Assembly: GCF_003918875.1 (NCBI RefSeq)
Contig: NW_025767123.1
Coordinates: 868,001 to 932,000, forward strand
Length of the DNA: 64,000 bases
Source of the DNA: Haliotis rubra
Lineage: Eukaryota
Reading direction: 5' to 3'
Shown here: piece after piece, positions 646 to 58,900 of the stretch
Numbering within the stretch: the first letter of the stretch is position 1
Layout: each line of letters opens with the position of its first letter
The notes under the pieces: model-generated
What the model saw: the letters and a program-made list of their open reading frames with translations, nothing else
Told to the model about the DNA's origin: nothing
The model's database searches: none
Position numbers and translations under genes: made by a program

Positions 646-2831
646 TTAGTCATTTTCAAAGCCTCCAATCAGGTTAAAGCGGTCTCCGAAAACGCCATCC
701 CCAGTGAACCCCGACACCGACAGCCGATACTCCGTGGCCTCGTCACCCACGGAGAAGGTGTTGTAAGATACTTGTCCGGGAGTGCTATCAAAATTCTTCA
801 ACGATATGTACAGCAAGTAAGCTCTGACGCTGGTCAGAGCATGCATCTTCTCCAGACCCAGCCACATGTAACAGTTGGAGTGGGTGAAACCAGACTTGTA
901 GTCGGCCCAGGGAACGTCGAGGTACGTCACGGGCTCAGCCTCACATCCACTGATGGTTTTGTCCCTGAACATGATCATGGCGGTGACTCCTTGACATTCC
1001 AAGTCAAACGGTTGTGCGGCTTTGGTCGGCCAGACAGTGTAGGTGCCAGTAGAATTACCAACGTACAGGGAAACGTCTGTACAGTCTGAAACAGTGACAT
1101 GATGACTGTCAAACACAGGTCAGTGATGGACAATGATGGACAAGAGCAATGAAGGAATCAACCAAGAACATCAATGTGTTAGTGACGTGACTGACCTAGA
1201 TGCATGTACAGTGACAACCTGAGAGTCGAAACCCACCGTCACAGGTTTCCTTCATGCCAAATGGACGCAGTTTCTATCTGGCGTTACCGAAGGAAAGTGA
1301 TATTCTTAACATGAACTCTTTCATCTTTTGCTTCGGTGAGGAGATCGTCATATAACTGAAGATTTACCTTCTATCCTGGTCTCACATATCCCTCCTGTAA
1401 AGGCAGGCAGACAGAGACAGGCATCAGCATCAAGGGTTCCTCCATTCTGGCAAGATGGCGAGGTCTAAAACAAAATAGGTGTTCAATGTAATAAAAAATA
1501 TAAAATATAGAAAGGAAAGCTTAACTGGAGGTTACAAGGTGAAGCGCTTGGGTAAGAGGCATAAGGACGAGTGTATTTCTTAAAAATGGATCTTCCACTA
1601 TATTTTGTATTGCAATATAGAAAAACTATTTATGTCGCCATTTGTGAATGCAACCTATCCACGATTACTCTTGTTTATTTTGGGTTTAAAGAAAAATGTA
1701 ACAATGAGCTAAATCATTTTTTAACATCAGGGGCGTTTAAGGTAGTGTGGTGCTTAAAGTGTTCGTTCGTCAAGCCGCCTCAAGATTCCCAACATGGGTC
1801 CAATATGTGAAGCTATAAGGATAGTTTAAGGATATATTATGTTCTTGTCACGATATTGGCGAAATACTTTATATTGTACTTCACTTACTCTCTGGAGGGA
1901 GGAGACCCAAAAATTGGTCTTCACACATCGTACCAATGCGGAGAGTCGAACCCGGGTCTTCGGCGTGACGAGCGAACGCTTTAACCACTGGGCTACCCCT
2001 GCAGCCCCCAACTCAGTGGAATGGCTTCAAGTTTCCAAAAGTTAACTGTCCCTTCATGTGGAGTAATATTCCACCAGTTCCAGATTTTGGTGTTCACATT
2101 TCTCAACTTTTTGAGGTACAGTCAGACATGCTCGTTGGATCACCATGTCAAAGAGCATCATTCGACTCTTGCTCAGAAGTTGTCTCATCAAGGTTAGGAC
2201 ACAAAATGCATGAGTTTTTATTGTAGACATGTGGCAGAAATTTCAAAATCTGGCACATCAGTGACAAAAGATGATCTCCGATGCAATTCCTTATTTTGAC
2301 TTTTACCCAACAGTCCCGATATTCTCAGGTGAACAATTTACTTGCCTATGTTTATGACACTGGTGGGGCAGGATACGCTAAGATCTGGTATCATCACTGT
2401 TTTTGTGCTGATTCATAATACATTCTCAAGACACAGATAGAATTGTACAATAGATTTCTTTTAGATGTGGAAAGGTGTCGCTCATATGCTTTGAATATAT
2501 TCAAATTAGAACTCACCTGACTGGAAGTGGGGAACTCAGTGAAAACCTTGCAGGTAAGGTTGGGAACACTGACAGGAACGACACGCTGCTCCATTGTCAA
2601 GACGGAGCATTTGTTGTCGTCGTTGCAGTAGATGAGACCGGTGCAGTTGGTGACGCCGTTGCAGGTGTTGGCACATTCGAGAGCCGAGGTTGTCTCTACG
2701 TAGTCGAAGACCATTGTTGCATCAATATGTGTCTGTTCTTCCTTGGAAAACCGCTGTGCAGAACACTGAGGTGAGCAGTTGACATTCACTGCTGTATAAA
2801 CAGTTACAAGCAAGAGTTGAAAACAAATCAT
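646..2831 (-). pseudogene. PAN/apple-EGF-fibrinogen-related gene copy A1, 3'-truncated in exon 3
   Basis: Exon 1 2831-2517 (MICFQ...SSQ|GTGAGT), exon 2 1464-1368 (TSPSCQNGGTLDADACLCLPAFTGGICETRIE, AG/GT ends), exon 3 from 1085 (DCTDVSLY...). Homology to paralogues stops at ~671 (GDRFNL), followed by unrelated IGGFEND* (stop 646-648). The FReD C-terminal part is missing relative to 41871-44091. Confidence 0.8.
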
Positions 2832-3574
2832 ATTTTGATTGCAGTGTAAGAAGAAGTTTCAAGATCGGCTCCAACAACCGTACCACTGTGATATGTGTGA
2901 CAGATCACCTGACTGTTTCCCTGGATGTCTGTGTTTGACTTTAACTATAACTGTGTTTGACCATTACCATGACTTCATGATATATCTGTATCCATAAAAT
3001 GAAAGTTTCCTTTTGTCTGACAGCATGGCACGCAATACTCAATTAAACGTGGTGATTCTTAATTCTACCTTATCTCAAAGAAGAACAAAACTAAGATCAG
3101 ATAATGATATTTAATTAAAGATATAGATTTTTTTCATTTTTTAACATTTGTTGTATACGCTGAGCATATTGACACTTCGTCACATTCACACTTGGGGTGA
3201 AAATATTGTTCTGCTTCAACACCTATTTTATTCCAACACAATTGTCTCTAAGTCATTAAGCGAAATTCGCGATATGGGTTTCGTTTGGATTCAAATCCCC
3301 ACAATGAAACGGTATATTTACACATTCTACACAGGGATTCAATGAGCTTTCAATTATTGGATGACTATTACTGACTTGTCTGAGGATCGTTCCTGCACAC
3401 TGTATAGCCTCGGGGTGCTAGTGTGAAGCAAAGAACTCTTGAAATACACAAAGATCGGTGGTCAACTTTGTATTTAATTGAAGAAACTTTAGGTCTAATT
3501 GTGTATCTTAGTAAACAAAACGAAGGTGAAATCTGTTTACTCATAAAATATACTGTCAATACAAACCCAAGTTT

Positions 3575-4400
3575 GAGCTACATACTGCCCTTGAGCAAGT
3601 TCATGATACAGCAACAGGGGCTGATGATAATCACTATCAGCTCCGAAAGCATTTGCCTGATTCATATCTGGAAACACTTCTAGATATGTTTGAAAAAATA
3701 TGGACATCAGAGAATTTTTCGCCCTCGTGGCGTAATGCCATTGTGGTCCCTATATCAAAACGTGGCCAAGATCATACTGATCCTTCTAATAACAGACCAA
3801 TATCTATAAAACCATGGAACGAGTGGTTAATAATAGATTATTTTGTACTTGGAAACCAATAACTTAATGAATAATATACAAAGTGGTTTCCGATGTAACA
3901 ATGATCATATGCCAGGTTAGAATCCTTTGTTAAAAATGCCATAGTATCTAAACAACATGTTCTCTCAATTTTCTTCGATCTTGAAAAAGCCTACGATACC
4001 ACTTGGAAGCACGGTATTCTGAAGGATGTACATGATATTGGTTTGAGAGCTCGTTTACCTCATTTTATCTCCAAATTTGTAACAGACAGGCATTTTCGCC
4101 CTGGGTCCACCCTGTCTGATCATTACAGTCAGGATCAGGGTGTTCAACAATTTGCCAGTATTTTGTCTTTCAGAGGTTTTAACTGATTCAGTTGATGGAT
4201 CACTTTTCGTGGATGATTATAATGTTTTTTGTCGTGGTGACAATAAATTTCTCAAATGGTCAATTGAAAATGGTTATAAATTTTCTAAATCAAATACAAA
4301 TTGTTATATCTGCATAAGGACCTAGAACTATTTTTAAATGGCACTCCCATCCAAGTTGTAAAGGAGGCCAATTCTTGCGACTTATCTTTGACTCTCATTT
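3575..4400 (+). mobile_element. Decayed non-LTR retrotransposon RT fragment (I/Nimb-like)
   Basis: WRNAIVVPISKRGQDHTDPSNNRPIS, QSGFR, FFDLEKAYDTTWKHGI, SLFVDDY in broken frames. Confidence 0.8.
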
Positions 4401-4863
4401 GATTGAGTGAGTGAGTTTAGTTTTACGCCGCACTCAGCACTATTACGGCTACATGGCGGCGGTCTGTAAATAATGCAGGTGTGCGAGGAAGGATGGAGAC
4501 GGCACAGCACAGGTAAATGAATCTATAACTTTGTCGGCACTTGCGCATCAGCATTGTGGGATGTCAAGGTCATTGGTGTCAAGGACACAGTATGATAACA
4601 ACAGCGAAGGAGACGTGTTTGATTGAGTGACTTGTCACGGTTTTACCTTTCTGCATAAAAGACAGACGTTGTGTGTACATATGTCACGGGGAACGTAATG
4701 TTCCATCACGTCAGCTACAGCCACAGAACCTCCAACAGCTGGTACATGCACTGCAGGGAGAATGTGTGAACATTCACCAGGCCACAATTCGCAATCTGAT
4801 TGGGTCATAGGGGCGACGATGCCAGTCAGTTCTCTACTCTTATGGGGGGACATACAAGATACT

Positions 4864-5019
4864 GAGTTTGGATTTACGCCGCTTTTAGCAATATTCCAGC
4901 AACATCACGGCGGGGCACACCAGAAATGGGCTTCACACATTGTACCCATGTGGGGATTCGAACCCGGGTCTTCGGTGTGACGAGCCAACGCTTTAACCAT
5001 TAGGCTGCCCTACCGCCCC
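4864..5019 (-). mobile_element. tRNA-derived SINE (family 1)
   Basis: Reverse complement has A-box TAATGGTTAAAGCG and B-box GGGTTCGAATCCC, plus the shared 3' GCTGGAATATTGCTAAAAGCGGCGTAA. Confidence 0.8.
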
Positions 5020-5534
5020 TGAAATTTAAACAATGTATTATTTATATTATACATAAAGTATACATCTGAAAACTAGTTTTGCGTTTATTTGTTTCTTCTT
5101 TCTTGGCAGACTATATTCCCTATTGAGAGCAGGTGACATAGCCATCAGGATATCTACATTTTGATTAGGACTGAGAACTCAGGGTGCACGTTCAGATATA
5201 CTACTGAAGGCTTAAATTTAACTACAGTTTTCATAATTGAAAGAGGTTAACATAATGACATAACATAATTTACATAAGTAGCAACAACAGAAGAATAGCA
5301 TTGCAACAACGTGATGGACAGGGTCCACATGATGAGGAGGCAAATCAAATGGGACTAATCATACAAGCGTGAGATGGAGCGATTCACTCAGGGGGAAGCA
5401 GACATGACTTAACAGACAGCGAATTCCACACACTCTGAATAGCAATGTCAATGCATCACAACTGAAATTATCCCAAGACTCCAAAACATCCAAGTCATAC
5501 TGAAGGTGGCCAAAGACGGTATTATAGACATTGT

Positions 5535-5540
5535 TTTATT
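5535..5540 (-). other. Candidate polyadenylation signal AATAAA for B1 (47144-47149 for B2)
   Basis: First AATAAA I found on the minus strand after the stop codon, lying beyond the short 44-bp array. Confidence 0.4.
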
Positions 5541-5574
5541 TTAGTTTTAATAAACCTCAGTGCTGTACATTCCC

Positions 5575-5725
5575 TTGCAAAAGTACCGCACATGTATAGT
5601 GCATATGTCGTGAAAGTTGTGTACGAGGACGGTACATGTATAGTGCATGTGTCATGAAAGTTATATGCCAGTACCGTACATGCATAGCTCATATGTCGTG
5701 AAGGCTATGTGCAAATGCCGTTTAC
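5575..5725. repeat. 44-bp minisatellite, short array (~3 units) downstream of B1
   Basis: Degenerate units of GTGTCGTGAAGGTTATGTGCAAGTACCGTGCATGTATAGTGAAT. Confidence 0.8.
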
Positions 5726-5752
5726 ATATCGTTAACCATTAGGGAGTCAGTG

Positions 5753-8721
5753 TTAGGCAGGATATATGAACATGTAGATGCTTTTGCATTCGGAAGGGGT
5801 GCCATCAGCAAGAATCCAATAAATGTCATATCGTTGGTGAGGATTCGTCTGACAGACATCCAACCTGTTCCACCAGGCTCCACGATGCCACTCAGCACAA
5901 GGGTTGACTGAGTTGTTGCAGTGATCCTTGGCACAGAAGTGACTACCATCCAGGGTTGACGCTGGATCCCCGAGGTTGAAGCGGTCTCCGAAAACGCCAT
6001 CCCCGGTGAACCCGGACACCGACAGCTGATACTCCGAAGCCTCGTCACCGACGGAGAAGGTGTTGTAAGCTACTTGTCCGGGAGTGTTATCAAATCTCTT
6101 CAGTGACATGTACAGCGAGTAAGATCTGACGCTGGTCAGAGCATGCATCTTCTCCAGACCCAGCCACATGTAACAGTTGGAGTGGGTGAAGCCAGACTTG
6201 TAGTCGGCCCAGGGAACGTCGAGGTACGTCACGGGCGCCGCCTCGCAGCCACTGATAGTTTTGTCCCTGAACATGATCATAGTAGTGACGCCTTGACATT
6301 CCAAGTCAAACGGTTGTGCGGCTTTGTTCGGCCAGACTGTGTAGGTTCCAGTAGAGTTACCAACGTACAGGGACACGTCTTTACAGTCTGAAACAGTAAA
6401 ACATTGACTCTCAAACATAGGACAATGGTGGACAAAAGCAAAAGTGTCATATATCAAGGGCATCAATGTGTTAGTGAGTTGGACATAAACCAACTTTGTA
6501 CAATATTCGAATTGGTTAAAACATAGACATGTTATGAATGAACTGTGACCCATCATACGAAGTAAGAGAGTCAACCCATTTTGAGCAGCATCGTCTATTA
6601 GCTTGACGACGAAACACTTTGGTGAAATTCATGAGCTTGGTTGGTGCCGACTGACCTGGAAGCATGTACAGTGACAACCTGAGGTTCGAACCCACCATCA
6701 CTGGTGTTTCTCGCGCCTAACTGACGCAACTTCTTTATGGCGGTACTGATGGAAGGTGATATTCTTAACAGGAATTCTTTAGGGATTCATCTTTTGCTTC
6801 CTTGCAGAGATCTTCACGATTGGTGAGTCCGGTTACACATACAAATGAAACTTCTGGGAAATGACCCTTACAAAACAGGATCACATAAATATGTCACGAT
6901 GCCAAAATATTCCAAATCTGTAACTGAAGGTTTACCTTCCATCCTGGTCTCACACTTCCCTCCTGTAAAGGCAGGCAGACAGAGACAGACAGCACCATCA
7001 AGGGTTCCTCCATTCTGGCATGATGGCGAAGTCTGAAACAAAACAGGTGCTGTTGGTTTTTCTCTAGTTCAAAACAAACAAAGGAAAGCTATACCAGATG
7101 TTTGCAGGTGGAAAACACTTTAAAGGAAGAACAACTGGCAGGTTTCTTTAAAATGCGATTTCCAATAGCTTACAATGCTGGCTTGTTATGCCGAAAGGTA
7201 CGGGTTCGATTCCCCTTATGGATATAATGTCTGAAGCCCATTTCTGGGGTTCCCCACAGTCAGATTCCTTTATTGCTCAAAACAAACATAGGAAAGCCAT
7301 ACCAGATGTTTGCACGGGGAAAACACTCAGAGGACTGACTGACTGACTGAGTTTGGTTTTTCGCCGCTTTTAGCAATATTCCAGCAATATCACGGCGGGG
7401 GACACCAGAAATGGTCTTCACTCATTGTACCCTTTTGGGATTCGAACCCAGGTCTTCGGCGTGACGAGCCAACGCTTTAACCACTAGACTACCCCACCGC
7501 CCCAACACTCAGAGGAAGAACAACTGACAGGTTTCTTCAAAATGCGATTTCCAATAGCTTACAGTGCTTGCTTGTTATGCCGAAAGGTACGGGTTCGATT
7601 CCCCTTATGGATATAATGTCTGAAGCCCATTTCTGGGGTTCCCCACAGTCAGATTCCTTTATTGCTGAAGGCGGAGTAAAACCAAACTCGTTTGCCCATT
7701 TTAACTTTACCCCAAAGAAAACAACGCAGTTACTACACATTTCTGGATTTCTCATATCAGTTGTAAAGACAAAATATGATATAATCTAGTTTATACAAGT
7801 TTTATATACAGTCTCTATGTGGAACTCGAACCAATATAAGTCTTTGTTATTTCAAAGAAGATATGATCTATGTACCTACAATTATACGTGCAACCTATCC
7901 ACTCAAAGTATTTGTTATGTCCTGTTAAGGAAAAGTGTCACAAGACTTGAGTATTTACACAAGCGGAATTCAATCAAGACAAACATGGATTTTCAACCTA
8001 AGAGGTGTTGGGGTAGCCTTGTGGTTACAGTGCTTCCTTGTTATGCCAGAAGGTACGGGTTCGATTCCCCTTTGGATATAATGTCTGAAGCCCATTTCTG
8101 GGGTTCCCCACAGTCAGATTCCTTCCAAACTCGTTTGCCCATTTTAACGTTACCCAAAAGAAAACAACAACGAATACTACACATTTCAGGATTTACAGTC
8201 TCATATTAGTTGTACACACAAAACATGACGTTATGTCAAACTCGTTAGGAAACGGGAATTTCACACGCTCAATTTGACAGAGTAGAAATCATGATGCGTT
8301 TTAGAGGGAGATGTCTGAAGCCAGTCATTGTATCTTTCATATTTAATTCTTTAATATCTTTAATTGATTTACAATTATCTCCCCTGAATATATTCAAATT
8401 TGAACTCACCTGACTGGAGGTCGTGACCTCTAAGAATGCCTTGCAGGTCGGGTAGGGAACGCTGACAGGAACGGAAGGCTGATCCAATGTCAACATGGAG
8501 CATCTGTTGTCGATGTTGCAGTAAATGAAACCGGTGCAGTTGGCGACGCCTTTGCAGGTGATGGCACATTGAGGGACTGACGTCGTCTGTATGTAGTCGA
8601 AAACCATTGCTGCGTCAACACCTGTCTGTACCTCCTGGTAAAAACTCGAAACGGTACATTGTGCACAAAGGATTGCAGTCAATCCTGCAAAACTAGTAAG
8701 TAAAAGGTGATACGATTTCAT
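5753..8721 (-). CDS. Secreted PAN/apple-EGF-fibrinogen C-terminal domain protein, copy B1 (347 aa, intact)
   Basis: Exons 8721-8410 (312 nt, phase 0), 7032-6936 (97 nt, TSPSCQNGGTLDGAVCLCLPAFTGGKCETRME) and 6387-5753 (635 nt) total 1044 nt in frame with canonical GT-AG. Hydrophobic signal peptide, CxxxC PAN pattern, FReD motifs WADYKSGF, WLGLEKMHALT, FSVGDEASEYQLSV, CAEWHRGAWW. Confidence 0.88.
7335..7503 (-). mobile_element. tRNA-derived SINE (family 1) with 13-bp TSD
   Basis: TSD AACACTCAGAGGA at 7322-7334 and 7504-7516. Empty site in B2 at ~48722. Confidence 0.88.
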
Positions 8722-8784
8722 AATTTCCTTCGTGAGATACTTATAGAAGTCTTTCAGTCCGAGCTACTTTCCTTCGACTGTCGC

Positions 8785-8865
8785 AGTGTGATGTGTGACA
8801 GAACTACTCTTGTCCCCCACGCTGTCTGTGTTTGGCCGTTACCATGACTACATTATATATCTGAC
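8785..8865 (-). promoter_or_regulatory. Conserved proximal upstream block (TATA-like) shared by A, B and C genes
   Basis: Plus-strand TTACCATGACTACAT(T/G)ATA(T/C)ATCT and TGTGAT..GTGACA motifs recur ~65-160 nt upstream of all six start codons (~2887-2990, 17443-17516, 44147-44247, 50117-50188, 59808-59881), although more distal flanks differ between A and B/C. Confidence 0.45.
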
Positions 8866-9674
8866 CACATGGCGAGGGTTGCATTGTGGTTCCACCTTCT
8901 TCATAATGATATGATAGAATGGTTGTTGACTTGTTTTGAGAGTATAGAGTTAATTATGTGGATTTAAGATACATTGCATATTGACTCATATTCATAATCC
9001 TCACTTTTGTCATTAAGTATGTAAGAATTCCCGTTCATATACAATAACGTTATTGTCCTTTCGTGTCATTAAAAGATATAAGCGACTAGTGTCTTAGTAT
9101 GACAGAGGTTAGATGACCTTTACACTGTGAGTTTTAACTACTATATTTCCCCGTTCAAACCTCGGGATCACAATTAAACGCCTGTATTCTTCCTGGCACA
9201 AATTTCGCCAATTTTATTCTTGCGATTACACACCTACAGTCTGGATTAAGTACTGGGGCCGGGACTCGTTAAACGTAGGTACTTTTGGCCACGAAATTCC
9301 TCTCGTTATTATTCTTGCAATGCTCCCTGGAGTTACGAGGAAATACGGAAGCATTCCATTGGTCAATGGATATTTGTAGCCTTATGTGTTGAAACTGTTA
9401 GTGTACGTATTCAAACATACTAAGAGTCCTTGTATGACACAAATACTTCAAGACGATTAAGTCGTTTGTATATATTGAATTTGAGAAAACCTTTCTCTGG
9501 TTTTGTTTCAAAGTCAGTTACGACAACATAATGCATGTGCATTCACCATAATCAAACATAATGACATGATACCAATACTTATTCCTGTTTCGGGCTAATA
9601 TTATATCATTAATGATGTGTTAATTAGTCACTTCAAAACTGATTTGCGTTTTGCGAAAGACTGTTCCTTTGACT

Positions 9675-10060
9675 GCCTCTACAAGAACAGTACTCTACAA
9701 GTCCCTCCCTTATCTAACGGAATTCTACAAATTCCCATTCTTATCTAACGGTACTCTACCACTTTCATCTAACAGTACTCCACAAGTTCCACCCTTATCA
9801 AACGGAACTCTACTCCCACCTTCATCCAACAGTTCCCAAGTTCTCACCCTTATCTAATGGTACTCTACAAGTTCCCAGCCTTATCTAATGGTACTCTACC
9901 AGTTCCCACCTTCATCTAACAGTACTCTACAAGTTCCCTTATTCCCGTATCTAACGGTGGTGCGACTCTATAAGTTTCCATCCTTGTCTAATGGTACTCT
10001 ATAAGTTTCCACCTTCATCTAACGGAATTCTGCAGGTTTCCCACTCTTATCTATCAGTAT
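9675..10060. repeat. 31-bp minisatellite upstream of B1
   Basis: Units of CTCTACAAGTTCCCACCCTTATCTAACGGTA. Confidence 0.88.
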
Positions 10061-10636: not shown

Positions 10637-10796
10637 GGGGTAGTCTAGTGGTTAAAGAGTTCGCTTGTCACGCCGAAGACCCGGGTTCGATTCCCCATAT
10701 GGGTACAATGTGTGAAGCCAATTTCTGGTGTCCACGGCGGGATATTGCTGGAATATTGCTACAAGCGGCGTCAAACTAAAATCACTCACTCACTCA
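10637..10796 (+). mobile_element. tRNA-derived SINE (family 1)
   Basis: GGGGTAGTCTAGTGGTTAAAG...CCGGGTTCGATTCCC...(CACT)n tail. Duplicate at 53183-53342, degraded copies at ~1738-1815, ~1905-2010 and ~25081-25235. Confidence 0.82.
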
Positions 10797-47335: not shown

Positions 47336-47359
47336 TCGTTAACCATTAGGGAGTCAGTG

Positions 47360-50050
47360 TTAGGCAGGATCTATGAACATGTAGATGCTTTTACATTCGT
47401 GAGGGGTACCATCGTCAAGAATCCAATAAATGTCATATCGTTGGTGAGGATTCGTCTGGCAGACATCTAGCCTGTTCCACCAGGCTCCACGATGCCACTC
47501 GGCACAAGGGTTGACTGAGTTGTTGCAGTGATCCTTGGCACAGAAGTGACTCCCATCCAGGGTTGTAGCTGGGTCCCCGAGGTTGAAGCGGTCTCCGAAA
47601 ACGCCATCCCCAGTGAACCCCGACACCGACAGCCGATACTCCGAGGCCTCGTCACCCACGGAGAAGGCGTTGTAAGACACTTGTCCGGGAGTGCTATCAA
47701 ATGTCTTCAGTGACATGTACACCCAGTAAGCTCGGACGCTGGTCAGAGCATACACCTTCTCCAGACCCAGCCACATATAACAGTTGGAGTGGGTGAAACC
47801 AGACTTGTAGTCGGCCCAGGGAACGTCGAGGTACGTCACGGGCGCAGCCTCACAGCCACTGATGGTTTTGTCCCTGAACATGATCATAGTAGTGACGCCA
47901 TGGCATTCTATGTCAAACGGTTGTGCGGAGTTGGTCGGCCAGACTGTGTAGGTTCCAGTAGAGTTACCAAGGTACAGGGACACGTCTTTACAGTCTGAAA
48001 CAGTAAAACATTGACTGTCAAACATAGGACAATGGTGGACAAAAGCAAAAGTGTCATATATCAAGGGCATCAATGTGTTAGTGACTTGGACAAAAACCAA
48101 CTTTGTACAATATTCGAATTGGTTAAAACAAAGACAACTTGTTATGAATGAACTGTGACCCATCATACGCAGTAAGAGAGTCACCCCATTTTGAGCAGCA
48201 TCGTCTATCAGCTTGACGACGAGACACTTTGGTGAAACTCATGAGCTTGGTTGGTGCCGACTGACCTGGAAGCATGTACAGTGACAACCTGACGTTCGAA
48301 CCCACCATCACTGGTGTCCCTCGCGCCTAACTGACGCAACTTCTATATGGCGGTACTGTTGGAAGGTGATATTCTTAACAGGAATTCCTTAGGGATTCAT
48401 ATTTTGCTTCCTTGCAGAGATCTTCACGATTGGTGAGTCCGGTTACATATACAAATGAAACTTCTGGGAAATGACTCTTACAAAACAGGATCACATAAAT
48501 AGGTCATGATGCCAAACAGTCCATATCTGTAAGTGAAGGTTTACCTTCCATCCTGGTCTCACACTTCCCTCCTGTGAAGGCAGGCAGACAGAGACGGACA
48601 GCACCATCAAGGGTTCCTCCATTCTGGCATGATAGCGAAGTCTGAAACAAAACAGGTGCTGTTGGTTTTCTCTAGTTCAAAACAAACATAGGAAAGCCAT
48701 ACCAGATGTTTGCAGGGTGAAAACACTCAGAGGAAGAACAACTGGCAGGTTTCTTCAAAATGCGATTTCCAATAGCTTACAGTGCTTGCTTGTTATGCCG
48801 AAAGGTACGGGTTCGATTCCCCTTATGGATATAATGTCTGAAGCCCATTTCTCGGGTTCCCCACAGTCAGATTCCTTTATTGCTGAAGGCGGAGTAAAAC
48901 CAAACTCGTTTGCCCATTTTAAATTTACCCAATAGAAAACAACGAAGAATACGACACATTTCTGGATTTCTCATATCAGTTGTAAAGACAAAATATGATA
49001 TAATCTAGTTTATACAGGTTTTACATACAGTCTCTATGTGGAACTCGAACCAATATAACTCTTTGTTATTTCAAAGAAGATATGATCTATGTACCTACAA
49101 TGATACGTGCAACCTATCCACTCAAAGTATTCGTTATGTCCTGTTAAGGAAAAGTGTCACAAGACTTGAGCATTTACACAAACGGAATTCAATCAAGACA
49201 AACATGGATTTTCAACCTAAGCGGTGTTGGGGTAGCCTTGTGGTTACAGTGCTTGCTTGTTATGCCAGAAGGTACGGGTTCGATTCCCCTTATGGATATA
49301 ATGTCTGAAGCCCATTTCTGGGGTTCCCCACAGTCAGATTCCTTTATTGCTGAAGGCGGAGTAAAACCAAACTCGTTTGCCCATTTTAACTTTACCCAAA
49401 AGAAAACAACAAAGAATACACATTTCAGGATTTACAGTCTCATATTAGTTGTACCCACAAAACGCGACGTTATGTCAAACTCGTTAGGAAACGGGAATTT
49501 CACACGCTCAATTTGACAGAGAAGAAATCATGATGAGTTTTAGAAGGAATATGCGGGAACCCGAAGGTGAGTTCGGCACATTCAAGCACAACACGATATT
49601 CGACTGTTCTAATTGTTCAATATCGTCCAGTCACGATATAGCTGAAACCAGTCATTGTATATTTAAATATGTTATCCCACACATGTTCATTCAGGATATA
49701 CAAGTATCTCTCCTGAAAATATTCAAATTTGAACTCACCTGACTGGAGGTCGTGACTTCTAAGAATGCCTTGCAGGTCGAGTAGGGGACGCTGACAGGAA
49801 CGGAAGGCTGATCCGATGTCAAAATGGAGCATCTGTTGTCGATGTTGCAGTAGATGAAACCGGTGCAGTTGGCGACGCCGTTGCAGGTGATGGCACATTG
49901 AGGGACTGACGTCGTCTGTACGTAGTCGAAAACCATTGCTGCGTCAACACCTGTCTGTACCTTCTGGTAAAAACTCGAAACGGTACATTGTGCACAAAGG
50001 ATTGCAGTCAATCCTGCAAAACCTGTAAGTAAAAGGTGATACGATTTCAT
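47360..50050 (-). CDS. Secreted PAN/apple-EGF-FReD protein, copy B2 (347 aa, intact frame, EGF Cys->Arg)
   Basis: Exons 50050-49739, 48641-48545 (TSLSCQNGGTLDGAVRLCLPAFTGGKCETRME) and 47994-47360. Canonical splice sites. Confidence 0.87.
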
Positions 50051-50864
50051 AATTTCCTTCGTGAGATACTTATAGAAGTCTTTCAGTCCGAGCTACTTTC
50101 CTTCGACTGTCTCAGAGTGACGTGTGACAGAACTCTTGTCCCCCACGCTGTCTGTGTTTGACCGTTACCATGACTACATTATATATCTGACTACATGGCA
50201 AGGGTTGCATTGTGGTTCCAGCTTCTTCATAATGATATGATTGAATGGTTGTTGACTTGTTTTGAGAGTATAGAGTTAATTATGTGGATTAACGTTACAT
50301 TGCATATTGACTCATATTCATAATCCTCACATTTGCCATTAAGTATGTAAGAATTCCCGTTCATATACAATAACGTTAATGTCCCTTCGTGTCATTAAAA
50401 GATATAAGTGACTTGTGTCTTAGTATGACAGAGGTTAGATGACCTTTACACTGTGAGTTTTAACTACTATATTTTCCCGTTCAAACCTCGGGATCTCAAT
50501 TAAACGCCGGTATTCTTCCTGGAACAAATACGAGGAAATACGGAAGCATTCCATTGATCAATATCTATGTGTAACCTTATGTGTTGAAACCGTAAGTGTG
50601 CGTACTCAAACATACTGAGAGTCCTTGTATGACGCAAATACTTCAAGATAATTTTGTCATTTGTTAATTGTATTTGAGAAAACCTTTCTCTGATTTTGTT
50701 TCAATGTCAGCTGCGACGACATAATGCATGTGCATTTAATCATACCCAATCATAATGACATGATACCAATACTTATTCCAGTTTCGGGTTAATATTATAT
50801 CATTAACGATGTGTTAATTTGTAATTTCAAAAAATGCGTTTTGCGAAAGACCGTTCCTTCGACT

Positions 50865-51420
50865 GCCTCTACAAGAACAGTACTCTACAAGTTCCCACCC
50901 TTATCTAATGGTACTCTACAAGTTCCCACCCTTATCTAACGGTACTCTACCAGTTCCCACCTTCATCTAACAGTACTCTACAAGTTCCCACCCTTATCTA
51001 ACGGTAATCTACCAGTTCCCACCAGTATCTAACTGTACTCTACAAGTTCCCACCCTTATGTAATGGTACTCTACAAGTTCCCACCCTTATCTAACGGTAA
51101 TCTACAAGTTCCCACCCGTATCTAACGGTACTCTACCAGTTCCCACCAGTATCTAATGGTACTCTACAAGTTCCCACCCCTATCTATCGGTACTCTACAA
51201 GTTCCCACCCGTATCTAACGGTACTCTACCAGTTCCCACCCGTATCTAACTGTACTCTACAAGTTCTCACCCTTATGTAATGGTACTATACAAGTTCCCA
51301 CAAGTTCCCCCGTATCTAACGGTACTCTACAAGTTCCCACCCTTATCTAACGGTACTCTACAAGTTTCCACCTTTATCTAAGGGAATTCTGCAGATTCCC
51401 ACTCTTATCTAACAGTACCT
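50865..51420. repeat. 31-bp minisatellite upstream of B2
   Basis: Longer, more homogeneous array of the same unit. Short remnants at ~19890-19965 and ~62270-62335 upstream of the C genes. Confidence 0.9.
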
Positions 51421-51925
51421 GCCACTTTGTTATGCGCATCAGTTAACACAAGTTACCTTTCACATTCATATGTTTTGTTTATTTTACGGGGTGTATATAG
51501 TATTCTATCAACTTGTCTGCTATCGGACGTAAAGAGGGACTGGTGACCATCGATCCATGTTAATATCAATATTGGTATTTACTGGGGTTTTAATGTAGTG
51601 AATTATTGATTTTCCCCTCTTTTTATTCATTTATGGAGCTGGAACAAGACGCTGATGACTTCTCGTCAACTAATGTAATCTGTACTGAACAATCTCGCAA
51701 TTTCCACCTCTGGAAACGAGCGAAATATGCCTAAAGTGCGAGAATGCGTGATCGCAAGAAACACCACACAATCGTTTAGTTTATATCTTGACCAACAACA
51801 AAAAAGTTGATAAAGAGATAGTTTTACTAACGACGTTGTAAACATGTACAAAAGTACCATGAATTAACATGTACTTGCTACAATGACGCATTGGTAATTT
51901 GCTGTAACACTCCTGGTTCCATGCA

Positions 51926-52164
51926 CTCGTGAAGGTCCGGGATAGAATTGATCTTCAGTAACCTATGCTTGTCATAAGAGGCGACTAACGGGATCGGGTG
52001 GTCAGGCTCGCTAGCTTGCTAGACACATGTCATCGGTTCCCAATTATGCAGATCGATGCACAAGCTGTTGATCATATGACTGTCTGATCCAGACTCGATT
52101 ATTTACAGATCGCCGCTATGTAGCTGGAGTATTGCTGAGTGCGGCGTAAAACTGAAGTCACTCA
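51926..52164 (+). mobile_element. SINE family 2 with 16-bp TSD, private to block 2
   Basis: TSD CTCCTGGTT(C/A)CATGCA. Empty site at ~10537-10552. Confidence 0.85.
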
Positions 52165-52189
52165 CTCCTGGTTACATGCAGTTGCTTAA

Positions 52190-53099
52190 GAAATACAGTT
52201 CGCTCTACCACCATGTATAGTGTAATAAAGCACACTTTCGCCCTGAACTATTATAGTTAAAGTACGAGGACGCTTGTGTCCGAGTGCTTTAACGTTATAA
52301 TAGTTCAGGTCGAAAGTGTGCTTTATTACACTATACATGGTGGTAGAGCGATCTGTATTTCTTTTCTTAGATGCCAAATTTAATACTTTCTAAGGATAAT
52401 TACGATTAATTTAAGGCAGAAAACAAACGACGGTGTCAGTGACCTACATTAAGAATCCTTGCACAGGGCTAACTGGCGCGCTGTTCTATTGGTGTGTCTG
52501 CCCCCCATACGTTAAGACGAACGTTACCAGAAAAAAATTATAACAGTTTGATGCCGGTTTACGTTCGGATTAAATATCTTCTCTGAATTATTATTATTAC
52601 ATCTGTCATTAACGTAAACCATATGGGACAATATGAACGTCGCATTTCTACTACCAACGTAAGTTTAGATCAGTACATCCAGATGAAGCTTAGTAGTCAA
52701 GCGACATTCCACGGTTGCATTGTGGGAATGTAAACATTGCGAACCGTACCGTGTCGCTGCAAACTTGTGAATCGAAATGACACATTTTCACCGTCGTAAA
52801 AGATAAACGTAATGTTTCCACCAGTGATGTTAGCCGCGTGAAGCAACTGCAAACCAAGAAACGGGATGCAACGGAGTAGTTTACTGTAGGAGGCCGTACG
52901 AGGCGATGACAACTGACATGCATCGTGACGTCGCTTACATTGTGACGTCATGTAAAATGGTTCGATTACGAGGGGGCACACTAGAATGGCGCAATAACGG
53001 GATAACGTCATTCAATTGTTACGTCATCAAAAACCTATCCCTTTATTGTCTGATAATGTATTTTTTTTTCGATTGTTCTAACCGCTAGGCATCTTAGAA
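52190..53099. mobile_element. TTAA-flanked insertion with a ~175-bp terminal hairpin
   Basis: Absent from block 1 (site ~10557-10565). TTAA at 52186-89 and 53100-03. ~77-bp inverted arms at 52188-52264 and 52283-52363. Confidence 0.75.
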
Positions 53100-53182
53100 T
53101 TAAGCATACGGGAGAGTTGATACATAATGCAGCGACCAATCGAAAATAATATACTTGTAAGAGATTATACTAAAAAAAAACC

Positions 53183-53342
53183 GGGACAGTATAGTGGTTA
53201 AAGAGTTCGCTTGTCACGCCGAAGACCCGGGTTCGATTCCCCCTATGGGTACAATGTGTGAAGCCAGTTTCTGGTGTGCCCGGCGTGATATTGCTGGAAT
53301 ATTGCTACAAGCGGCGTCAAACTAAAATCACTCACTCACTCA
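53183..53342 (+). mobile_element. tRNA-derived SINE (family 1), block 2 copy
   Basis: Homologous to 10637-10796. Confidence 0.8.
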
Positions 53343-54554
53343 ACAGTTATTTTGTCATATGGCGGCGGTCTTTAAACAACGACGTCTTGACCAGACAACA
53401 ACGTTCTCGATGACAAAGTCAGGCCAAGTATCCATATAACTAAACACTGAGTGAGAATGAACGAGATGAGAAATGTACCCATGACCTGTGATCGTATCTA
53501 GTCACTAATATGCAGTATGTCTTGTCTCAATCATAGCTGTGTCTATAATGAATCAGAACACAGATTTCATTAGGATGTCTTCAGCAACCCATGCTTGTCG
53601 TAAGAGGCGACGAACGGGATCAGGTGGTCAGGCTCGCTTGGTTGACTCACTGCAAGTCATCGTATCCCAAATAGGTAGATCAATGCTCGTGCTGTTGATC
53701 GCTGGAATCCCCGGTCCAGACTCGATTATTTACAGACCGCTGCCATAGCTGAGTGCGGCGTTAAACAACAACCAAATCAAAACAATGGGATGGCTTTTGA
53801 AACAACAAGGGTACATATTTAATACATTTAAGCGGTTATAGCATATCCATGTCCGAATACATTGAAGACATAGTCAAACAATCAGGGCATCAAGATAATC
53901 TGGTATAATAAACTGGACAATACATGTATTTTGCACATAAAAGTGAACGTTCAATTCTGACAATGTGTAACAGAAAATGTTTTCAAAAGAATCTACTAAA
54001 AGTAAATAAATAAACAAAACCTGGATCTGTGGCTTTTGTGTAATATTACCAAAACTGTGAATGTCACGTCAGGTGAAACCTGAACTTGAAATGGCGCATG
54101 AAATTTCGCTCAGGAATGACAGAATGTTGAACTGAGGAATCTAGGCGTGGTACACAAGTATACTGCCGATGACAGTTTAAATTGAATTACGGAATTACGG
54201 AGTCTCGTGATGAGAAAACCAATTAAATAGGACTAAACATACATCCGAACACTTACGTAGACACGACTTCGAGGGGCACAAGCTCCGAAAGCAACACATA
54301 CCAACTGAAACAAGCCCAAAGACTACAAAACATCCAAGTCATACTGAAGGTGGCTAAAGACGATATTGCAGACATTGTCTTATTATGGGATTTAAGTTTT
54401 AATTTACTTCTTTGCTGTAAATTCCCCTTTCAGAACACATCTTGGTCTGAATGTCCTTCTTGTGAATTTTCTTTTCTGGCACAGTTTATGAACTGTGAAG
54501 TTTATGTAGATGTTCCATGCATTTATAGCATATATCTCGAGAAATTTATGTAAT

Positions 54555-55950
54555 TATGTACCGCGCATGTGTAGCGGATATGTCGTGAAGGTTATGTACA
54601 AGTACCTTGCAAGTATAGCGAATGCGTGGTGAAGGTTATGTGCATGTACCGTGCATAGGTCGTGAAGGTTATAACCAAGTACCGTGCATGTTTAGTGACA
54701 GTGTCGTCAAGGTTATGTGCATGTACCGTGCATGTATAGTGAATGTGTCGTAAAGGTTATGTGCAAGTATCGTGCAGAGGTCGTGAAGGTTATGTGCCAG
54801 TACCATGCATGTATAGTGAATGTGTCGTAAAGGTAATGTGCAAGTACCGTGCAGGTCTTGAAGGTTATGTGCCAGTACCGTGCATGTATAGCGGATGTGT
54901 CGTGAAGGTTATGTGCAAGTATCGTGCCTGTATAGCGGATGTGTCGGAAGGTTATGTGCCAGTACGGTACATGAACACCGAATGTGTCGTAAAAGTAATA
55001 TGCAAGTACCGTGCATAGGTCGTGAAGATTATGTGCAAGTACCGTGCATAGGTCGTGAAGATTATGTGCAAGTACCGTGCAAGTATAGCGAATGTGTGGT
55101 GAAGTTTATGTGCAAGTACCGTGCATGTATAGTGGATGTGTCGTGAAGGTTATGTGCAAGTACCGTGCAGATATAGTGAAGGTTATGCGCAAGTACCGTG
55201 CGTGTATAGTGGATGTGTCGTGAAGGTTATGTGCCAGTACCGTACCTGTATAGTGAATGTGTCGTGAAGGTTATGTGCAAGTACCGTGCAGGTATAGTGA
55301 AGGTTATGTGTAAGTACCGTGCCTGTATAGTGGATGTGTCGTGAAGGTTATGTGCAAGTACCGTGCAGGTATAGTGAAGGTTATGTGCAAGTACCGTGCC
55401 TGTATAGTGAAGGTTATGTGCAAGTACCGTGCAGGTATAGTGGATGTGTCGAGCAGGTTATGTGTAAGTACCGTGCCTGTATAGTGAATGTGTCGTGAAG
55501 GTTATGTGCAAGTACCGTCCAGGTATAGTGAAGGTTATGTGCAAGTACCGTGCCTGTATAGTGGATGTGTAGTGCAGGTTATGTGTAAGTACCGTGCAGG
55601 TATAGTGAATGTGTCGTGAAGGTTATGTGCAAGTACCGTGTACGTATTGTCGATGTGTCGTGCAGGTTATGTGCAAGTACCGTGCATGTATAGCGCATGT
55701 GTGGTCCAGGTTATGTGCAAGTACCGTGCCTGTATAGTGGATGTGTAGTGCAGGTTATGTGTAAGTACCGTGCAGGTATAGTGAATGTGTCGTGAAGGTT
55801 ATGTGCAAGTACCGTGTACGTATTGTCGATGTGTCGTGCAGGTTATGTGCAAGTACCGTGCATGTATAGCGCATGTGTGGTCCAGGTTATGTGCAAGTAC
55901 CCTGCATGTATAGCGCATGTGTCGAGAAGGTTATGTGCAAGTACCGTGCA
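54555..55950. repeat. 44-bp minisatellite, long array downstream of C2
   Basis: 44- and 33-bp units, with a 176-bp higher-order duplication near 55534-55886. Confidence 0.93.
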
Positions 55951-55990
55951 TATTGTTTATGCCTACTGACATTTTTAGGGAGTTTGAGTA

Positions 55991-58900
55991 TTAGGCAGGA
56001 TTTATGAACATATAGATGCTTTTACATTCGTGAACGGTACCATCGTCAAGAACCCAGTAAATGTCACGTTGTTGGTGAGGATTCGTCTGGCAGACATCTA
56101 GCCTGTTCCACCAGGCTCCACGATGCCACTCGGCACAAGGGTTGACTGAGTTGTTGCAGTGATCCTTGGCACAGAAATGACTCCCATTCAGGGTTGTAGC
56201 TGGGTCCCCGAGGTTGAAGCGGTCTCCGAAAACGCCATCCCCGGTGAACCCGGACACCGACAGTCGGTACTCCGAGGCCTCGTCACCCACGGAGAAGGCG
56301 TTGTAAGATACTTGTCCGGGAGTGCTATCAAACTTCTTCAAGGACATGTACAGCGTGTAAGGTCGGACACTGGTCAGAGCATACATCTTCTCCAGACCCA
56401 GCCACATGTAACAGTTGGAGTGGGTGAAACCAAACTTGTAGTCGGCCCAGGGAACGTCGAGGTACGTCACGGGCACCGACTCGCAGCCACTGATGGTTTT
56501 GTCCCTGAACATGATCATGGCGGTGACTCCTTCACATTCCAAGTCAAACGGTTGTGCGGCTTTGGTCGGCCAGACAGTGTAGGTGCCAGGAGAGTTCCCA
56601 ACGTACAGGGACACGTCTTTACAGTCTGAAACAGTGACATGATGACTGTCAAACACAGGTCACTGATGGACAATGATGGACAAGAGCAATGAAGGAATCA
56701 ACCAAGAACGCCAATGAGTTGGACAAACCATCTTTGAACAGTATTCGAATTGGTTAGAAATAGAGACTCTGTTATAACTCAACTGTGATTCTCAATACGA
56801 AATAAGAGAGTCAACTCGTTTTAAACAACATTTCAATTACAGCACTGTCTGTCAGCTTGACCACGTGACACGTTGGTGAAACCCATGAGTTCGGTTGGTG
56901 CCGACTGACCTGGAAGCATGTACAGTGACAACCTGAGGTTCGAACCCACCATCACTGGTGTCCCTCTTCTATATGGCAGTACTGATGGAAGGAGATATTC
57001 TTAAAGGTCACATGCAACCGGAAAACATAATGAAAACACAATTATCACTTATTCATGACATATAATATACATTGCTGATTGTGAAAAAAACCCAAATAAA
57101 CAAAATTATAAGCGTACAATCGCAAATCAAAAGAGTAATATTTTGTACTCGGGTTTACTTCCCTCGAAACGAAGCACCCGGGAGACCGAACCCAGTCAGA
57201 GCGAGTGGGCGTGCACTCAAGTTAAACGAAGTCTCTCATTGGCTGGTTCATTTGTCAATACCCTGAGGGCTCATTGTGTGTGTGTATATAGAGATGATCT
57301 GTTTGATTGGCATTTTAGAAGTATGGTGAGTAATAAGAAAGTAAGAGTGACAACGGTATAAGAATCCATACCGAAACGTCGCATCATATACAATAAAAGA
57401 AGTTGTTATCCATATGGAATGTGTATAGAGATGTTGGGTTTTGTAAATATATGCTCTCTGCATTGGCGTTCGATCCAATCAACAAATACTGAGATGGTGA
57501 ACAACTGCGTGGCTGGAAACTGTAGTTCGTCTAAGCAGGGATAATCTACAACATATAGTCTTCCTGGTCAAAGTACAAAGCAGGACTTGAAACTGACAAT
57601 GGATGCAGTTTGTTTGCAACCCACAGACATAATAACATGTCATGTGTACAAGTATCACACCTGCCTGTCTGTGTAATTACATAATGTGACAGAGACAGAA
57701 CTCAGGTGCAAGAGCCATCAATCAATGTATTTTGTTTATGGTGTATAGTCTGATAGGTGTTACGTTCAAATTGCATGTGGTCAATGATTGAAGTTGCGTA
57801 TTGCATATTGTCATTAGCAGACAGACAGGCAGACACATAGGTGTCAATAAAACAGACATTGAGTTTTTTCTGTGAAAGAGACTGCTTATCACAATCAACA
57901 TATTTTTCTATGTTTCCATAGACATGTATTAAAACATTCCAGTTTCAAGCTGAGCAATTTTTAACAATGAAATTAGTATTTCTAATTCTACACTTTCTTG
58001 AGAACTTATGGGACCAGTGTATTTTTATTACTGCAGACCCAAGATGCTTGTAATCACAAGAAACATCTATTGTTCTCCAATTTCGACCACAGCGATAATC
58101 CTTGCACGCGTCACTTGCTGTGTTTTTACGAGTCGCCTTCCCGGTTCAAGCCGCGCGAACCTAATCACTACGCATGCGCTATGGGCGCAGAACAGCTGTT
58201 GAAACCACTTTTCACCCCAGCGCTGGGGTGAAATTAGTGAATCGTTTGAACTACGATTTCGCGGGGTTTTTTTCATCGCGTTATTTTTCAACTTTATAAG
58301 TTGAATTTGCATTTTTGATAATTTGTTACTGTAAGTCCATACCGAAAGGTATCAGAATCTGCAAAGTTGTGTTTTGCGTTGCATGTGACCTTTAACAGGA
58401 ATTCTTTAGGAATTCGTCTTTTGCTTCCTTTCAGAGATCTTCACGATTGGTGAGTCCGGTTACATATACAAATGAAACTTCTGGGAAATGACCCTTACAA
58501 AACAGGATCACATAAATAGGTCATGATGCCAAAATAGTCCATATCTGTCACTGAAGGTTTACCTTTTATCCTTGTCTCACAGTTCCCTCCTGTGAAGGCA
58601 GATGGACACTGACAGGCAGCACCAAGAAAGCTTCCACCATTCTGGCAGGATGACGAGGTCTAAAACAAAACAGAGGTTGCTTTTCTCACATTTATACAAA
58701 GGAGGGCCACACCAGATGTTTGCACGGTGAAAGACCAAGGTAAGAAACATCACAACTGGCCAGTATCTTCAAAATGCGATTTCAAAAATACTTCTTTCTT
58801 ATCTCAAAGAAGAAATTGTTCTTGTACCTATAATGGTACGTGCAACCTATCCTCAAAGTACTCGTTGTGTCCTGTTTAAGAAAAGTGTCACAAGGCCTGA

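What the first reader, a model, noticed from the sequence alone, without database searches (positions are those of the whole stretch)
671..56625. Exon-3 variants are shuffled across paralogue classes (gene-conversion signature)
Seen: introns and flanks pair the genes A1/A2, B1/B2 and C1/C2, but exon-3 motifs do not follow those pairs. KAAQ is in A1, B1, C2 and NSAQ in A2, B2, C1. EKMH..YNT is in A1+B1, EKVY..YNA in A2+B2 and EKMY in both C. VTAM is shared by A1 and C2, and QRDIYW by A2 and C2. Exon 1 of A is far more diverged from B/C than exon 3 is. Inference: recurrent ectopic conversion homogenises and recombines the FReD exon, producing mosaic variants.
Basis: partly seen in the sequence, partly recalled or inferred. 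Interest (0 to 1): 0.75.

Follow-up and report, generated by a model that had tools for sequence, protein, structure and literature searches.

The report
Abalone lectin genes swapping exon pieces
In a tandem cluster of blacklip abalone fibrinogen-type lectin genes, the exon for the recognition domain carries variants shuffled between non-matching gene copies, most likely by gene conversion, a well-known way for immune-type gene families to evolve.

Summary
The window is Haliotis rubra contig QXJH01000439.1, 868,001-932,000. It carries minus-strand, three-exon genes (signal peptide plus PAN-like domain, EGF-like domain, fibrinogen-related domain or FReD).

- **History kept by flanks.** Flanks, introns and exon 2 pair A1/A2, B1/B2 and C1/C2: 1-8% divergence within pairs against 20-57% between classes.
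- **Exon 3 differs.**
- **Recombination tests.** PHI p=0.001-0.02. About half of informative site pairs are incompatible. One 200-nt identical tract and several triplet mosaics survive multiple-test correction. 31 of 75 within-pair differences reuse states found in other classes (simulated null about 15, P=0.002-0.007).
- **Synonymous sites.** A versus B/C divergence is 0.11-0.24 in the first 411 nt of exon 3, against 0.59-0.75 in exon 1.

Caveats:
- The whole-exon tree is star-like and does not reject the pair topology (AU p=0.12-0.5).
- The last third of the exon stays class-specific in A.
- Only A2, B1, B2 and C2 are intact; A1, C1 and a seventh copy, D, are broken.
- Only short contigs were available, so a chimeric assembly is not excluded.

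Verdict: real, ordinary interlocus gene conversion; a new member of a known kind.

The parts
671..1085 (-). A1 exon 3 (FReD), 3'-truncated at 671 by a ~520-bp deletion relative to A2/A3, followed by a (CA)n run
   Evidence: Pfam Fibrinogen_C on paralogues
1368..1464 (-). A1 exon 2 (EGF-like, 97 nt)
2517..2831 (-). A1 exon 1 (signal peptide + PAN-like)
5753..6387 (-). B1 exon 3 (intact FReD)
6936..7032 (-). B1 exon 2
8410..8721 (-). B1 exon 1; the surrounding ~570 nt (8315-8884) are 93% identical to C1 although the flanks beyond are ~75%
13558..14193 (-). C1 exon 3, frameshifted (2-bp insertion, 1-bp deletion) in this assembly
16193..16289 (-). C1 exon 2
17067..17378 (-). C1 exon 1
34031..34594 (-). 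D: seventh exon-3 copy, 5'-truncated, with the C-type 44-bp minisatellite downstream
41871..42505 (-). A2 exon 3 (intact; NCBI protein P0001)
43257..43353 (-). A2 exon 2
43777..44091 (-). A2 exon 1
47360..47994 (-). B2 exon 3 (intact; P0002). Its 3' part (about 47390-47470) carries C-class states although both flanks are B-class
48545..48641 (-). B2 exon 2
49739..50050 (-). B2 exon 1
55991..56625 (-). C2 exon 3 (intact)
58563..58659 (-). C2 exon 2
59432..59743 (-). C2 exon 1
671..21489 (.). Duplicated block 1 (A1-B1-C1 plus a Tc1/mariner copy), colinear with block 2
42091..64000 (.). Duplicated block 2 (A2-B2-C2 plus a Tc1/mariner copy). Substitution divergence from block 1 is 4.4% (A segment), 4.9% (B) and 1.9% (C) outside exon 3

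Best explanation
**What it is.** The window holds part of a lineage-specific tandem array of secreted PAN-like/EGF-like/FReD lectin-type genes of Haliotis rubra. The array grew by segmental duplication of an A-B-C unit, and extra A-type copies lie nearby.

**What happened after duplication.** Short-tract, non-reciprocal exchange (interlocus gene conversion) moved pieces of the FReD exon between non-allelic copies. The affected stretch is mainly the first ~520 nt of exon 3 plus up to ~100 nt of the adjoining intron.

**Two effects.**
- Exon 3 stays far more alike between classes than exon 1, the introns or the flanks. This is concerted evolution.
- A limited set of pre-existing variants (KAAQ/NSAQ, VTAM/VTTM, MH/MY/VY, T/A, QRD/QRY/QQY) is re-dealt into new combinations, so that duplicated 'twins' differ by states borrowed from other classes.

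**Role of broken copies.** Broken copies (A1, C1 and D, plus A0 and A3 outside the window) take part alongside the four intact genes.

**Shown versus inferred.**
- Shown: the mosaic site patterns, the statistics, and the contrast between exon and flanks.
- Inferred: the mechanism itself, its direction, its germline timing and any benefit for ligand recognition.
For: **Identity of the genes.**
- The FReD identity is shown by Pfam PF00147 at E=6e-22.

**Flanks versus exon 3.**
- Flanks and introns diverge 1-8% within pairs and 20-57% between classes, while every exon-3 pair diverges 4-9%.
- A-C similarity (4-14%) runs about 100 nt into intron 2, while B differs there by 16-36%.

**Recombination tests.**
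- PHI gives p=0.0009-0.021. Between 40% and 52% of informative site pairs are incompatible, and Rm is at least 7-14. PHI on the four intact genes alone gives p=0.008.
- A3 and B2, about 200 kb apart, are identical over columns 320-519 (28 polymorphic sites; p=0.0002, Bonferroni-corrected 0.004).
- Triplet mosaics reach p=1.5e-5 to 1.9e-4, which is 0.003-0.04 after correction.

**Reuse of states.**
- Within-pair differences whose two states both recur in other classes number 13/29, 16/44 and 8/21, against about 12% expected (p=1.5e-5, 7.8e-6 and 1.9e-3). Of these, 6/11, 12/23 and 3/9 synonymous differences are of that kind.
- The pooled 31/75 compares with a simulated mean of about 15 on the pair tree with fitted extreme rate heterogeneity (P=0.002-0.007).

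**Synonymous divergence.**
- dS between A and B/C is 0.59-0.75 in exon 1, 0.11-0.24 in the 5' part of exon 3, and 0.38-0.48 in its 3' part.
- In the 3' part, B1-B2 dS is 0.273 while B2-C1 is 0.049. B2 nevertheless has B-type sequence on both sides of the exon, which points to a non-crossover event.

**Within-pair excess.** Exon-3 divergence within pairs exceeds that of the rest of each segment, and still does after removing CpG sites (4.4% versus 2.9%, p=0.003).

**Read support.** Short-read contigs from two samples cover exon 3 of A1 and B1. No alternative letters are listed at the discordant sites.
Against: - Whole-exon trees are star-like. The pair or class topology is not rejected (AU p=0.118, 0.30 and 0.48).
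- Among the six window genes alone, no single pairwise tract survives correction.
- Models fitted to the data want about 76% invariant sites, so some homoplasy can be recurrent mutation. CpG sites diverge about 3 times faster, and exon 3 is CpG-rich.
- Within-pair excess relative to exon 1 is only marginal (p=0.04-0.07).
- All copies come from one Nanopore-based, Racon/Pilon-polished, merged assembly (PMC6774278).
- The reads available here were 100-500-nt contigs, which cannot phase an exon.
Confidence: 0.7

Rival explanations
1. The assembly produced the mosaics. Polishing or merging of 93-97% identical paralogues, or of two haplotypes placed in tandem, could yield chimeric exon-3 consensus sequences, so that part of the 'shuffling' is not in the animal.
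For: - The assembly is wtdbg/DBG2OLC with Racon and Pilon polishing, QuickMerge and haplotig purging, on a genome with 1.3-1.4% heterozygosity (PMC6774278).
- Several copies carry 1-2-bp indels typical of uncorrected long-read errors.
- In one sample, the contigs over A1 exon 1 differ from the assembly at 5 sites.
- Contigs stop at branch points, e.g. just before columns 65-66.
Against: - Chimeric consensus cannot create the low between-class divergence of exon 3, which must be real for the copies to be confusable at all.
- At 5-9% divergence, 150-nt reads map to the right copy.
- Blocks 1 and 2 differ by 4-5% and by large indels, far above allelic heterozygosity.
- The array is irregular (A0, A1, D, A3), not a simple doubled haplotype.
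- Contigs from two samples match exon 3 of A1 and B1, with no alternative letters listed at discordant sites.
Confidence: 0.12
2. There was no exchange. Exon 3 is simply more constrained than exon 1, and a small set of hypervariable or CpG positions mutated repeatedly to the same few states, under diversifying selection or mutational bias.
For: - The AU tests do not reject the pair tree.
- Fitted models give 76% invariant sites or alpha 0.02.
- CpG sites diverge about 3-fold faster.
- Several of the same states also occur in H. asinina and H. cracherodii genes.
- From protein identities I estimated, without computing it, that exon 1 also diverges several-fold more than exon 3 between species.
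Against: - Even under that very permissive model, the reuse of states is twice the expectation (P=0.002-0.007).
- Incompatibility is spatially clustered (PHI).
- Adjacent changes travel together, at columns 65-66, 104-107 and 560-561.
- Half of the reused states are synonymous.
- Synonymous divergence drops 3-5-fold in the 5' part of exon 3 but not in its 3' part.
- The similarity runs into intron 2.
Confidence: 0.1
3. The hybrids arose by unequal crossing-over between misaligned paralogues during expansion of the array (reciprocal recombination creating chimeric genes), rather than by non-reciprocal conversion after duplication.
For: - The array is irregular, with extra A copies, a truncated D and blocks of unequal age: 1.9% for the C segment against 4.4-4.9% for A and B.
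- A shared breakpoint near columns 520-527 recurs in many triplets.
- A 44-bp minisatellite lies directly downstream of the C-type exons.
Against: - Both flanks of each exon 3 keep the same class. B2, for example, is B-type in intron 2 and in the 3' flank but C-like inside, which requires double exchanges.
- The mosaic is fine-scaled (Rm at least 7-14 within 635 nt).
Confidence: 0.08

Closest known systems
Biomphalaria glabrata FREPs (e.g. FREP3), diversified by gene conversion and point mutation
   Same: Both are molluscan fibrinogen-related recognition genes in multi-copy families. In both, variants derive from a limited set of germline source sequences by conversion plus point mutation (PMC7588048, PMC12074976).
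   Different: The snail FREPs carry IgSF domains upstream of the FBG domain, and their diversification was reported as somatic and centred on the IgSF exon. Here the upstream domains are PAN-like and EGF-like, the mosaic exon is the FReD itself, and only germline assembly sequence was examined.
Concerted evolution / interlocus gene conversion in tandem immune gene families (MHC class genes, sea-urchin Sp185/333)
   Same: Both show tandem paralogues, segmental duplications, nearby repeats and mosaic 'element' patterns. In both, flanks keep the history while the exon is shuffled (PMC5103432 and PMC1988830, listed).
   Different: The protein family is different. The scale here is small: 7 copies in the window and 9 seen in all. 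No evidence on expression or population diversity was obtained.
PAN/Apple-FReD and EGF-FReD ('FReM') architectures of other molluscs
   Same: The domain order is signal, PAN/Apple, EGF-like, FBG. PAN-FReDs are reported from Lottia, Crassostrea and one Biomphalaria gene (PMC7588048). The H. asinina and H. cracherodii homologues pass the Pfam PAN_1 threshold.
   Different: The H. rubra copies reach only 16-17 bits for PAN_1 against a cut-off of 21.4. The EGF-like exon is recognised only weakly.
Chicken immunoglobulin pseudogene-V conversion
   Same: Truncated or frameshifted copies sit next to intact genes and share sequence tracts with them.
   Different: The resemblance is one of layout only. 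No somatic process, no donor/acceptor direction and no enzyme dependence were tested here.

Membership tests
Fibrinogen-related domain (FReD) proteins, Pfam PF00147 | Fibrinogen_C domain above the Pfam gathering score | tested here: met
   The match scores 76-79 bits against a cut-off of 22. The best solved relative is FIBCD1, E=1.7e-15.
Fibrinogen-related domain (FReD) proteins, Pfam PF00147 | Canonical calcium/ligand pocket residues of the P subdomain | not tested
   The alignment to FIBCD1 covers the region, but individual residues were not evaluated. Another finding of the scan (s1-341761) deals with this.
Interlocus gene conversion / concerted evolution in a tandem array | Paralogues whose flanks record one history while an internal tract shows another (divergence contrast) | tested here: met
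   Synonymous divergence is 0.11-0.24 (exon 3, 5' part) against 0.59-0.75 (exon 1).
Interlocus gene conversion / concerted evolution in a tandem array | Significant recombination statistics (PHI, GENECONV-type tracts, triplet tests) | tested here: met
   PHI gives p=0.001-0.02. The A3-B2 tract has a corrected p of 0.004. Triplets have corrected p of 0.003-0.04.
Interlocus gene conversion / concerted evolution in a tandem array | Tree of the tract significantly incongruent with the tree of the flanks | tested here: not met
   AU p is 0.118 for columns 1-415, 0.30 for columns 416-637 and 0.48 for the full exon. The full-exon ML tree equals the class tree.
Interlocus gene conversion / concerted evolution in a tandem array | Non-crossover character (same class on both sides of the converted tract) | tested here: met
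   B2 has B-type intron 2 and a B-type 3' flank around a C-like 3' exon part.
Interlocus gene conversion / concerted evolution in a tandem array | Mosaics confirmed on single molecules | not testable with these tools
   Only Logan contigs of 100-500 nt were available.
Biomphalaria-type FREPs (IgSF + FBG, somatically diversified) | One or two IgSF domains upstream of the FBG domain | tested here: not met
   Pfam finds PAN_1 (weak) and an EGF-like hint, with no Ig-type domain.
Biomphalaria-type FREPs (IgSF + FBG, somatically diversified) | Variant sequences within one individual beyond the germline copies | not testable with these tools
   No raw reads and no RNA runs were available.

The most novel reading that the evidence does not exclude
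The array could work as a diversification device. In that reading, the truncated and frameshifted FReD exons (A1, C1 and D, plus A0 and A3 nearby) are kept as donor cassettes that feed short conversion tracts into the four intact genes. This might also happen somatically in haemocytes, as claimed for snail FREPs, and might be helped by the 44-bp minisatellite that abuts the C-type exons. A related possibility is cross-gene splicing, since NCBI model P0007 joins B1 exons 1-2 to A1 exon 3.
Probability: 0.08. Interest if true: 0.75.

Novelty: new member of a known kind. Interest (0 to 1): 0.38.

Why it matters
Fibrinogen-related lectins are among the most expanded candidate pattern-recognition families of molluscs. 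How their diversity arises is well studied only in the snail Biomphalaria.

This locus gives a compact germline example in a commercially important abalone. The duplication history is still readable in the introns, while the recognition-domain exon has been homogenised and re-assorted.

It also offers ready-made markers: class-specific introns combined with shuffled exon variants. These could be used in long-read amplicon tests of conversion rate, of somatic versus germline diversification, and of association with disease resistance.

There is a practical warning as well. Exon-based trees or orthology calls for these genes will mislead.

Tried and rejected
ML trees and AU tests do not reject the pair topology. 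I therefore dropped 'different tree' as the argument and used site-level tests.
- **Pairwise tracts among the six window genes.** None is significant after correction. Significance came only after adding A3 and D.
- **Within-pair excess divergence as strong proof.** It shrinks once CpG sites and exon-1 synonymous sites serve as controls, so I keep it only as supporting evidence.
- **Cross-species test of concerted evolution.** H. asinina has only two tandem genes plus one distant gene, and exon 1 is too diverged to assign orthology (35-56% protein identity). No decisive by-species versus by-class contrast was possible. The outgroups served only to polarise states.
- **The idea that A1's end at 671 marks the duplication boundary.** Rejected. 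A3, A2 and A0 show it is an internal deletion of about 520 bp.
- **Earlier scan notes by words.** These gave no earlier conversion finding.


Full report
**What is in the window**

The window has no N. Its exon-3 ORFs match annotated Haliotis rubra proteins at 99% identity (P0001, P0002). A look-up of model P0007 places the window at QXJH01000439.1, 868,001-932,000.

On the minus strand lie six three-exon genes:
- exon 1 is 312 or 315 nt and encodes a signal peptide plus a PAN-like module;
- exon 2 is 97 nt and is EGF-like;
- exon 3 is about 635 nt and encodes a fibrinogen-related domain (FReD).

Pfam Fibrinogen_C scores 76-79 bits against a cut-off of 22. The closest solved relative is FIBCD1. 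PAN_1 stays below threshold in the H. rubra copies but passes it in the H. asinina and H. cracherodii homologues.

Self-comparison shows two colinear blocks, 671-21489 and 42091-64000. Each holds A-B-C plus a Tc1/mariner copy. They are separated by a retroelement-rich stretch and by a seventh, 5'-truncated exon-3 copy, D (34031-34594).

Exons were analysed one by one, by reference. The 100 N of locus L001 were left as they are.

**State of the copies**

- A2, B1, B2 and C2 have intact exon 3.
- A1 stops at 671. Comparison with A2, A3 and A0 shows an internal deletion of about 520 bp, not a duplication boundary.
- C1 has a 2-bp insertion and a 1-bp deletion.
- D lacks its first ~70 nt.
- Outside the window, A0 lies about 6 kb downstream of A1 and has a 14-bp insertion. 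A3 lies about 150 kb away and has two 1-bp deletions. Both are further A-type copies.
- The small indels could be assembly errors (see caveats).

**Check of the observation**

Flanks and introns pair the genes. Within pairs, divergence is 1-8%. Between classes it is 20-57%, which is essentially unalignable. Trees of the upstream 300 nt, exon 2 and the end of intron 2 give the pairs with 89-100% support.

In exon 3 (columns 1-415) all pairs are 4-9% apart. A1-A2 and B1-B2 (7.0% each) are no closer than cross-class pairs. Exon 1 of A differs from B/C by 26-28%.

**Is it more than chance?**

- **Incompatibility.** Of 27 informative sites among the six genes, 48% of site pairs are incompatible, and at least 7 recombination events are needed.
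- **PHI.** It is significant for every taxon set: p=0.0096 for the six genes, 0.0009-0.003 with A3, A0 and D added, and 0.008 for the four intact genes alone.
- **Identical runs.** A Sawyer-type run test finds one globally significant tract: A3 and B2 are identical over columns 320-519 (p=0.0002, corrected 0.004). No pair among the six window genes survives correction.
- **Triplet tests.** Of the 3SEQ kind, these give corrected p of 0.003-0.04 for B2, C1 and A1 as mosaics. A recurrent breakpoint lies near columns 520-527 and another near 243-320.

**A direct test of borrowed variants**

If twins diverged by point mutation, the new state should usually be private to one copy. Instead, both states recur in other classes at 13 of 29 (A), 16 of 44 (B) and 8 of 21 (C) within-pair differences. 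About 12% would be expected even if every hit on an already polymorphic site counted. Half of these differences are synonymous.

I then simulated evolution on the pair tree, using models fitted to these same data (76% invariant sites, or gamma alpha 0.02). This is a deliberately permissive null. It gives about 15 such differences against 31 observed (P=0.002-0.007).

Adjacent changes also travel together, at columns 65-66, 104-107 and 560-561.

**Homogenisation versus constraint**

Synonymous divergence separates the two explanations.
- Between A and B/C, dS is 0.59-0.75 in exon 1 but 0.11-0.24 in the first 411 nt of exon 3. In the last 220 nt it is 0.38-0.48, as high as between species. The 5' two-thirds of exon 3 are therefore homogenised, while the 3' third of A keeps an old identity.
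- In that 3' third, B1-B2 dS is 0.273 while B2-C1 is 0.049. Yet B2 is B-type in intron 2 and in the 3' flank. This is the pattern of a non-crossover conversion.
- A-C similarity (4-14%) extends about 100 nt into intron 2, where B differs by 16-36%.
- Exon 1 of B and C is also nearly homogenised (4-7%; a 93%-identical stretch of about 570 nt sits inside ~75% flanks). Exon 2 instead groups A with B.
- At class level, the whole gene is therefore a patchwork.

**What weakens the case**

- Whole-exon trees are star-like. The full-exon ML tree recovers the classes, and AU tests do not reject the pair topology (p=0.118, 0.30 and 0.48).
- Exon-3 divergence within pairs is 1.5-1.8 times that of the rest of each segment, and synonymous sites diverge 2.7-3.5 times more than noncoding DNA. 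But CpG sites diverge about 3-fold faster, and exon 3 is CpG-rich. Without CpG sites the excess is 4.4% against 2.9% (p=0.003), and against exon 1 it is only marginal (p=0.07).
- Some shared states also occur in H. asinina and H. cracherodii genes. That fits either old variants being re-dealt or recurrent mutation.

**Assembly and reads**

The assembly combines wtdbg and DBG2OLC contigs. It was polished with Racon and Pilon, merged with QuickMerge, scaffolded with RNA-seq and purged of haplotigs. Genome heterozygosity is 1.3-1.4% (PMC6774278).

Ten public runs hold part of window 600-6500, and none is on record as RNA. Contigs of two samples of the same organism were laid at 97% likeness or better.
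- They cover exon 3 of A1 and B1.
- No alternative letters are listed at the discordant sites.
- They are only 100-500 nt long and end at branch points, so they cannot phase an exon.

Chimeric consensus therefore remains a live rival for the fine-scale mosaics. It does not threaten the low between-class divergence of exon 3.

**Comparison with what is known**

Gene conversion plus point mutation is the accepted source of diversity of Biomphalaria FREPs (PMC7588048, PMC12074976). Mosaic tandem families such as sea-urchin Sp185/333 are also described. PAN/Apple-FReD and EGF-FReD architectures are known from other molluscs.

My searches found no paper on conversion in abalone FReD genes. That is absence in the searched library only.

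The locus fails one defining FREP feature, the IgSF domains. It should be filed as a PAN/EGF-FReD family evolving by ordinary interlocus conversion.

**Verdict**

- The finding is a new member of a known kind and of moderate interest.

Noticed in passing
window 649-8721 (NCBI model P0007): The annotated 282-aa protein P0007 joins B1 exon 1 and exon 2 to the truncated A1 exon 3. It skips B1's own intact exon 3 and A1's exons 1-2. This is either a modelling artefact or read-through splicing between neighbouring paralogues.
   Followed up: partly
window 12044-13518, 32297-33991, 54495-55951: A 44-bp-period minisatellite begins a few tens of bases after the stop codon of the C-type exon 3 copies (C1, D, C2). 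A and B copies have only short versions. It is a possible recombination-prone neighbour of the converted exon.
   Followed up: partly
window 18596-19696 and 60964-62064: Two copies of a Tc1/mariner element with intact 366-aa transposase ORFs (DDE_3 and HTH domains) lie at the same place in both blocks. They were therefore copied with the block rather than inserted twice.
   Followed up: partly
window 27160-31943: A retroelement-rich stretch lies between the blocks. It has an RNase H-like ORF and long GC-rich minus-strand ORFs without Pfam hits, and may be a tyrosine-recombinase-type (DIRS-like) retroelement. It was only observed.
   Followed up: no
window 13520-21489 vs 55950-64000: The C segment of the two blocks differs by 1.9%, whereas the A and B segments differ by 4.4-4.9%. 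Either the blocks were not copied in one event, or a later long exchange reset the C side.
   Followed up: partly
window 6600-6790, 14400-14600, 48200-48390, 56800-56970 (intron 2): A ~120-nt intron stretch contains a tRNA-T-arm-like motif and may be SINE-derived. It is shared by all classes and is only 3-4% diverged between B and C, although neighbouring intron sequence differs by 22-36%.
   Followed up: no
L006:18722-28076 and L001:11500-22426: The array continues outside the window. An A-type pseudogene copy A0 lies ~6 kb downstream of A1. Copy A3, plus the first exons of a further, more diverged gene, lie ~150 kb away on the same contig. L001 contains a 100-N gap, which was not filled.
   Followed up: partly
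window 42776-43240 and 1534-2171: Pair-specific insertions occur in A-class introns: ~465 bp next to the exon-2 donor of A2, and ~640 bp in intron 1 of A1. The twins have therefore been separate long enough to collect their own insertions.
   Followed up: no
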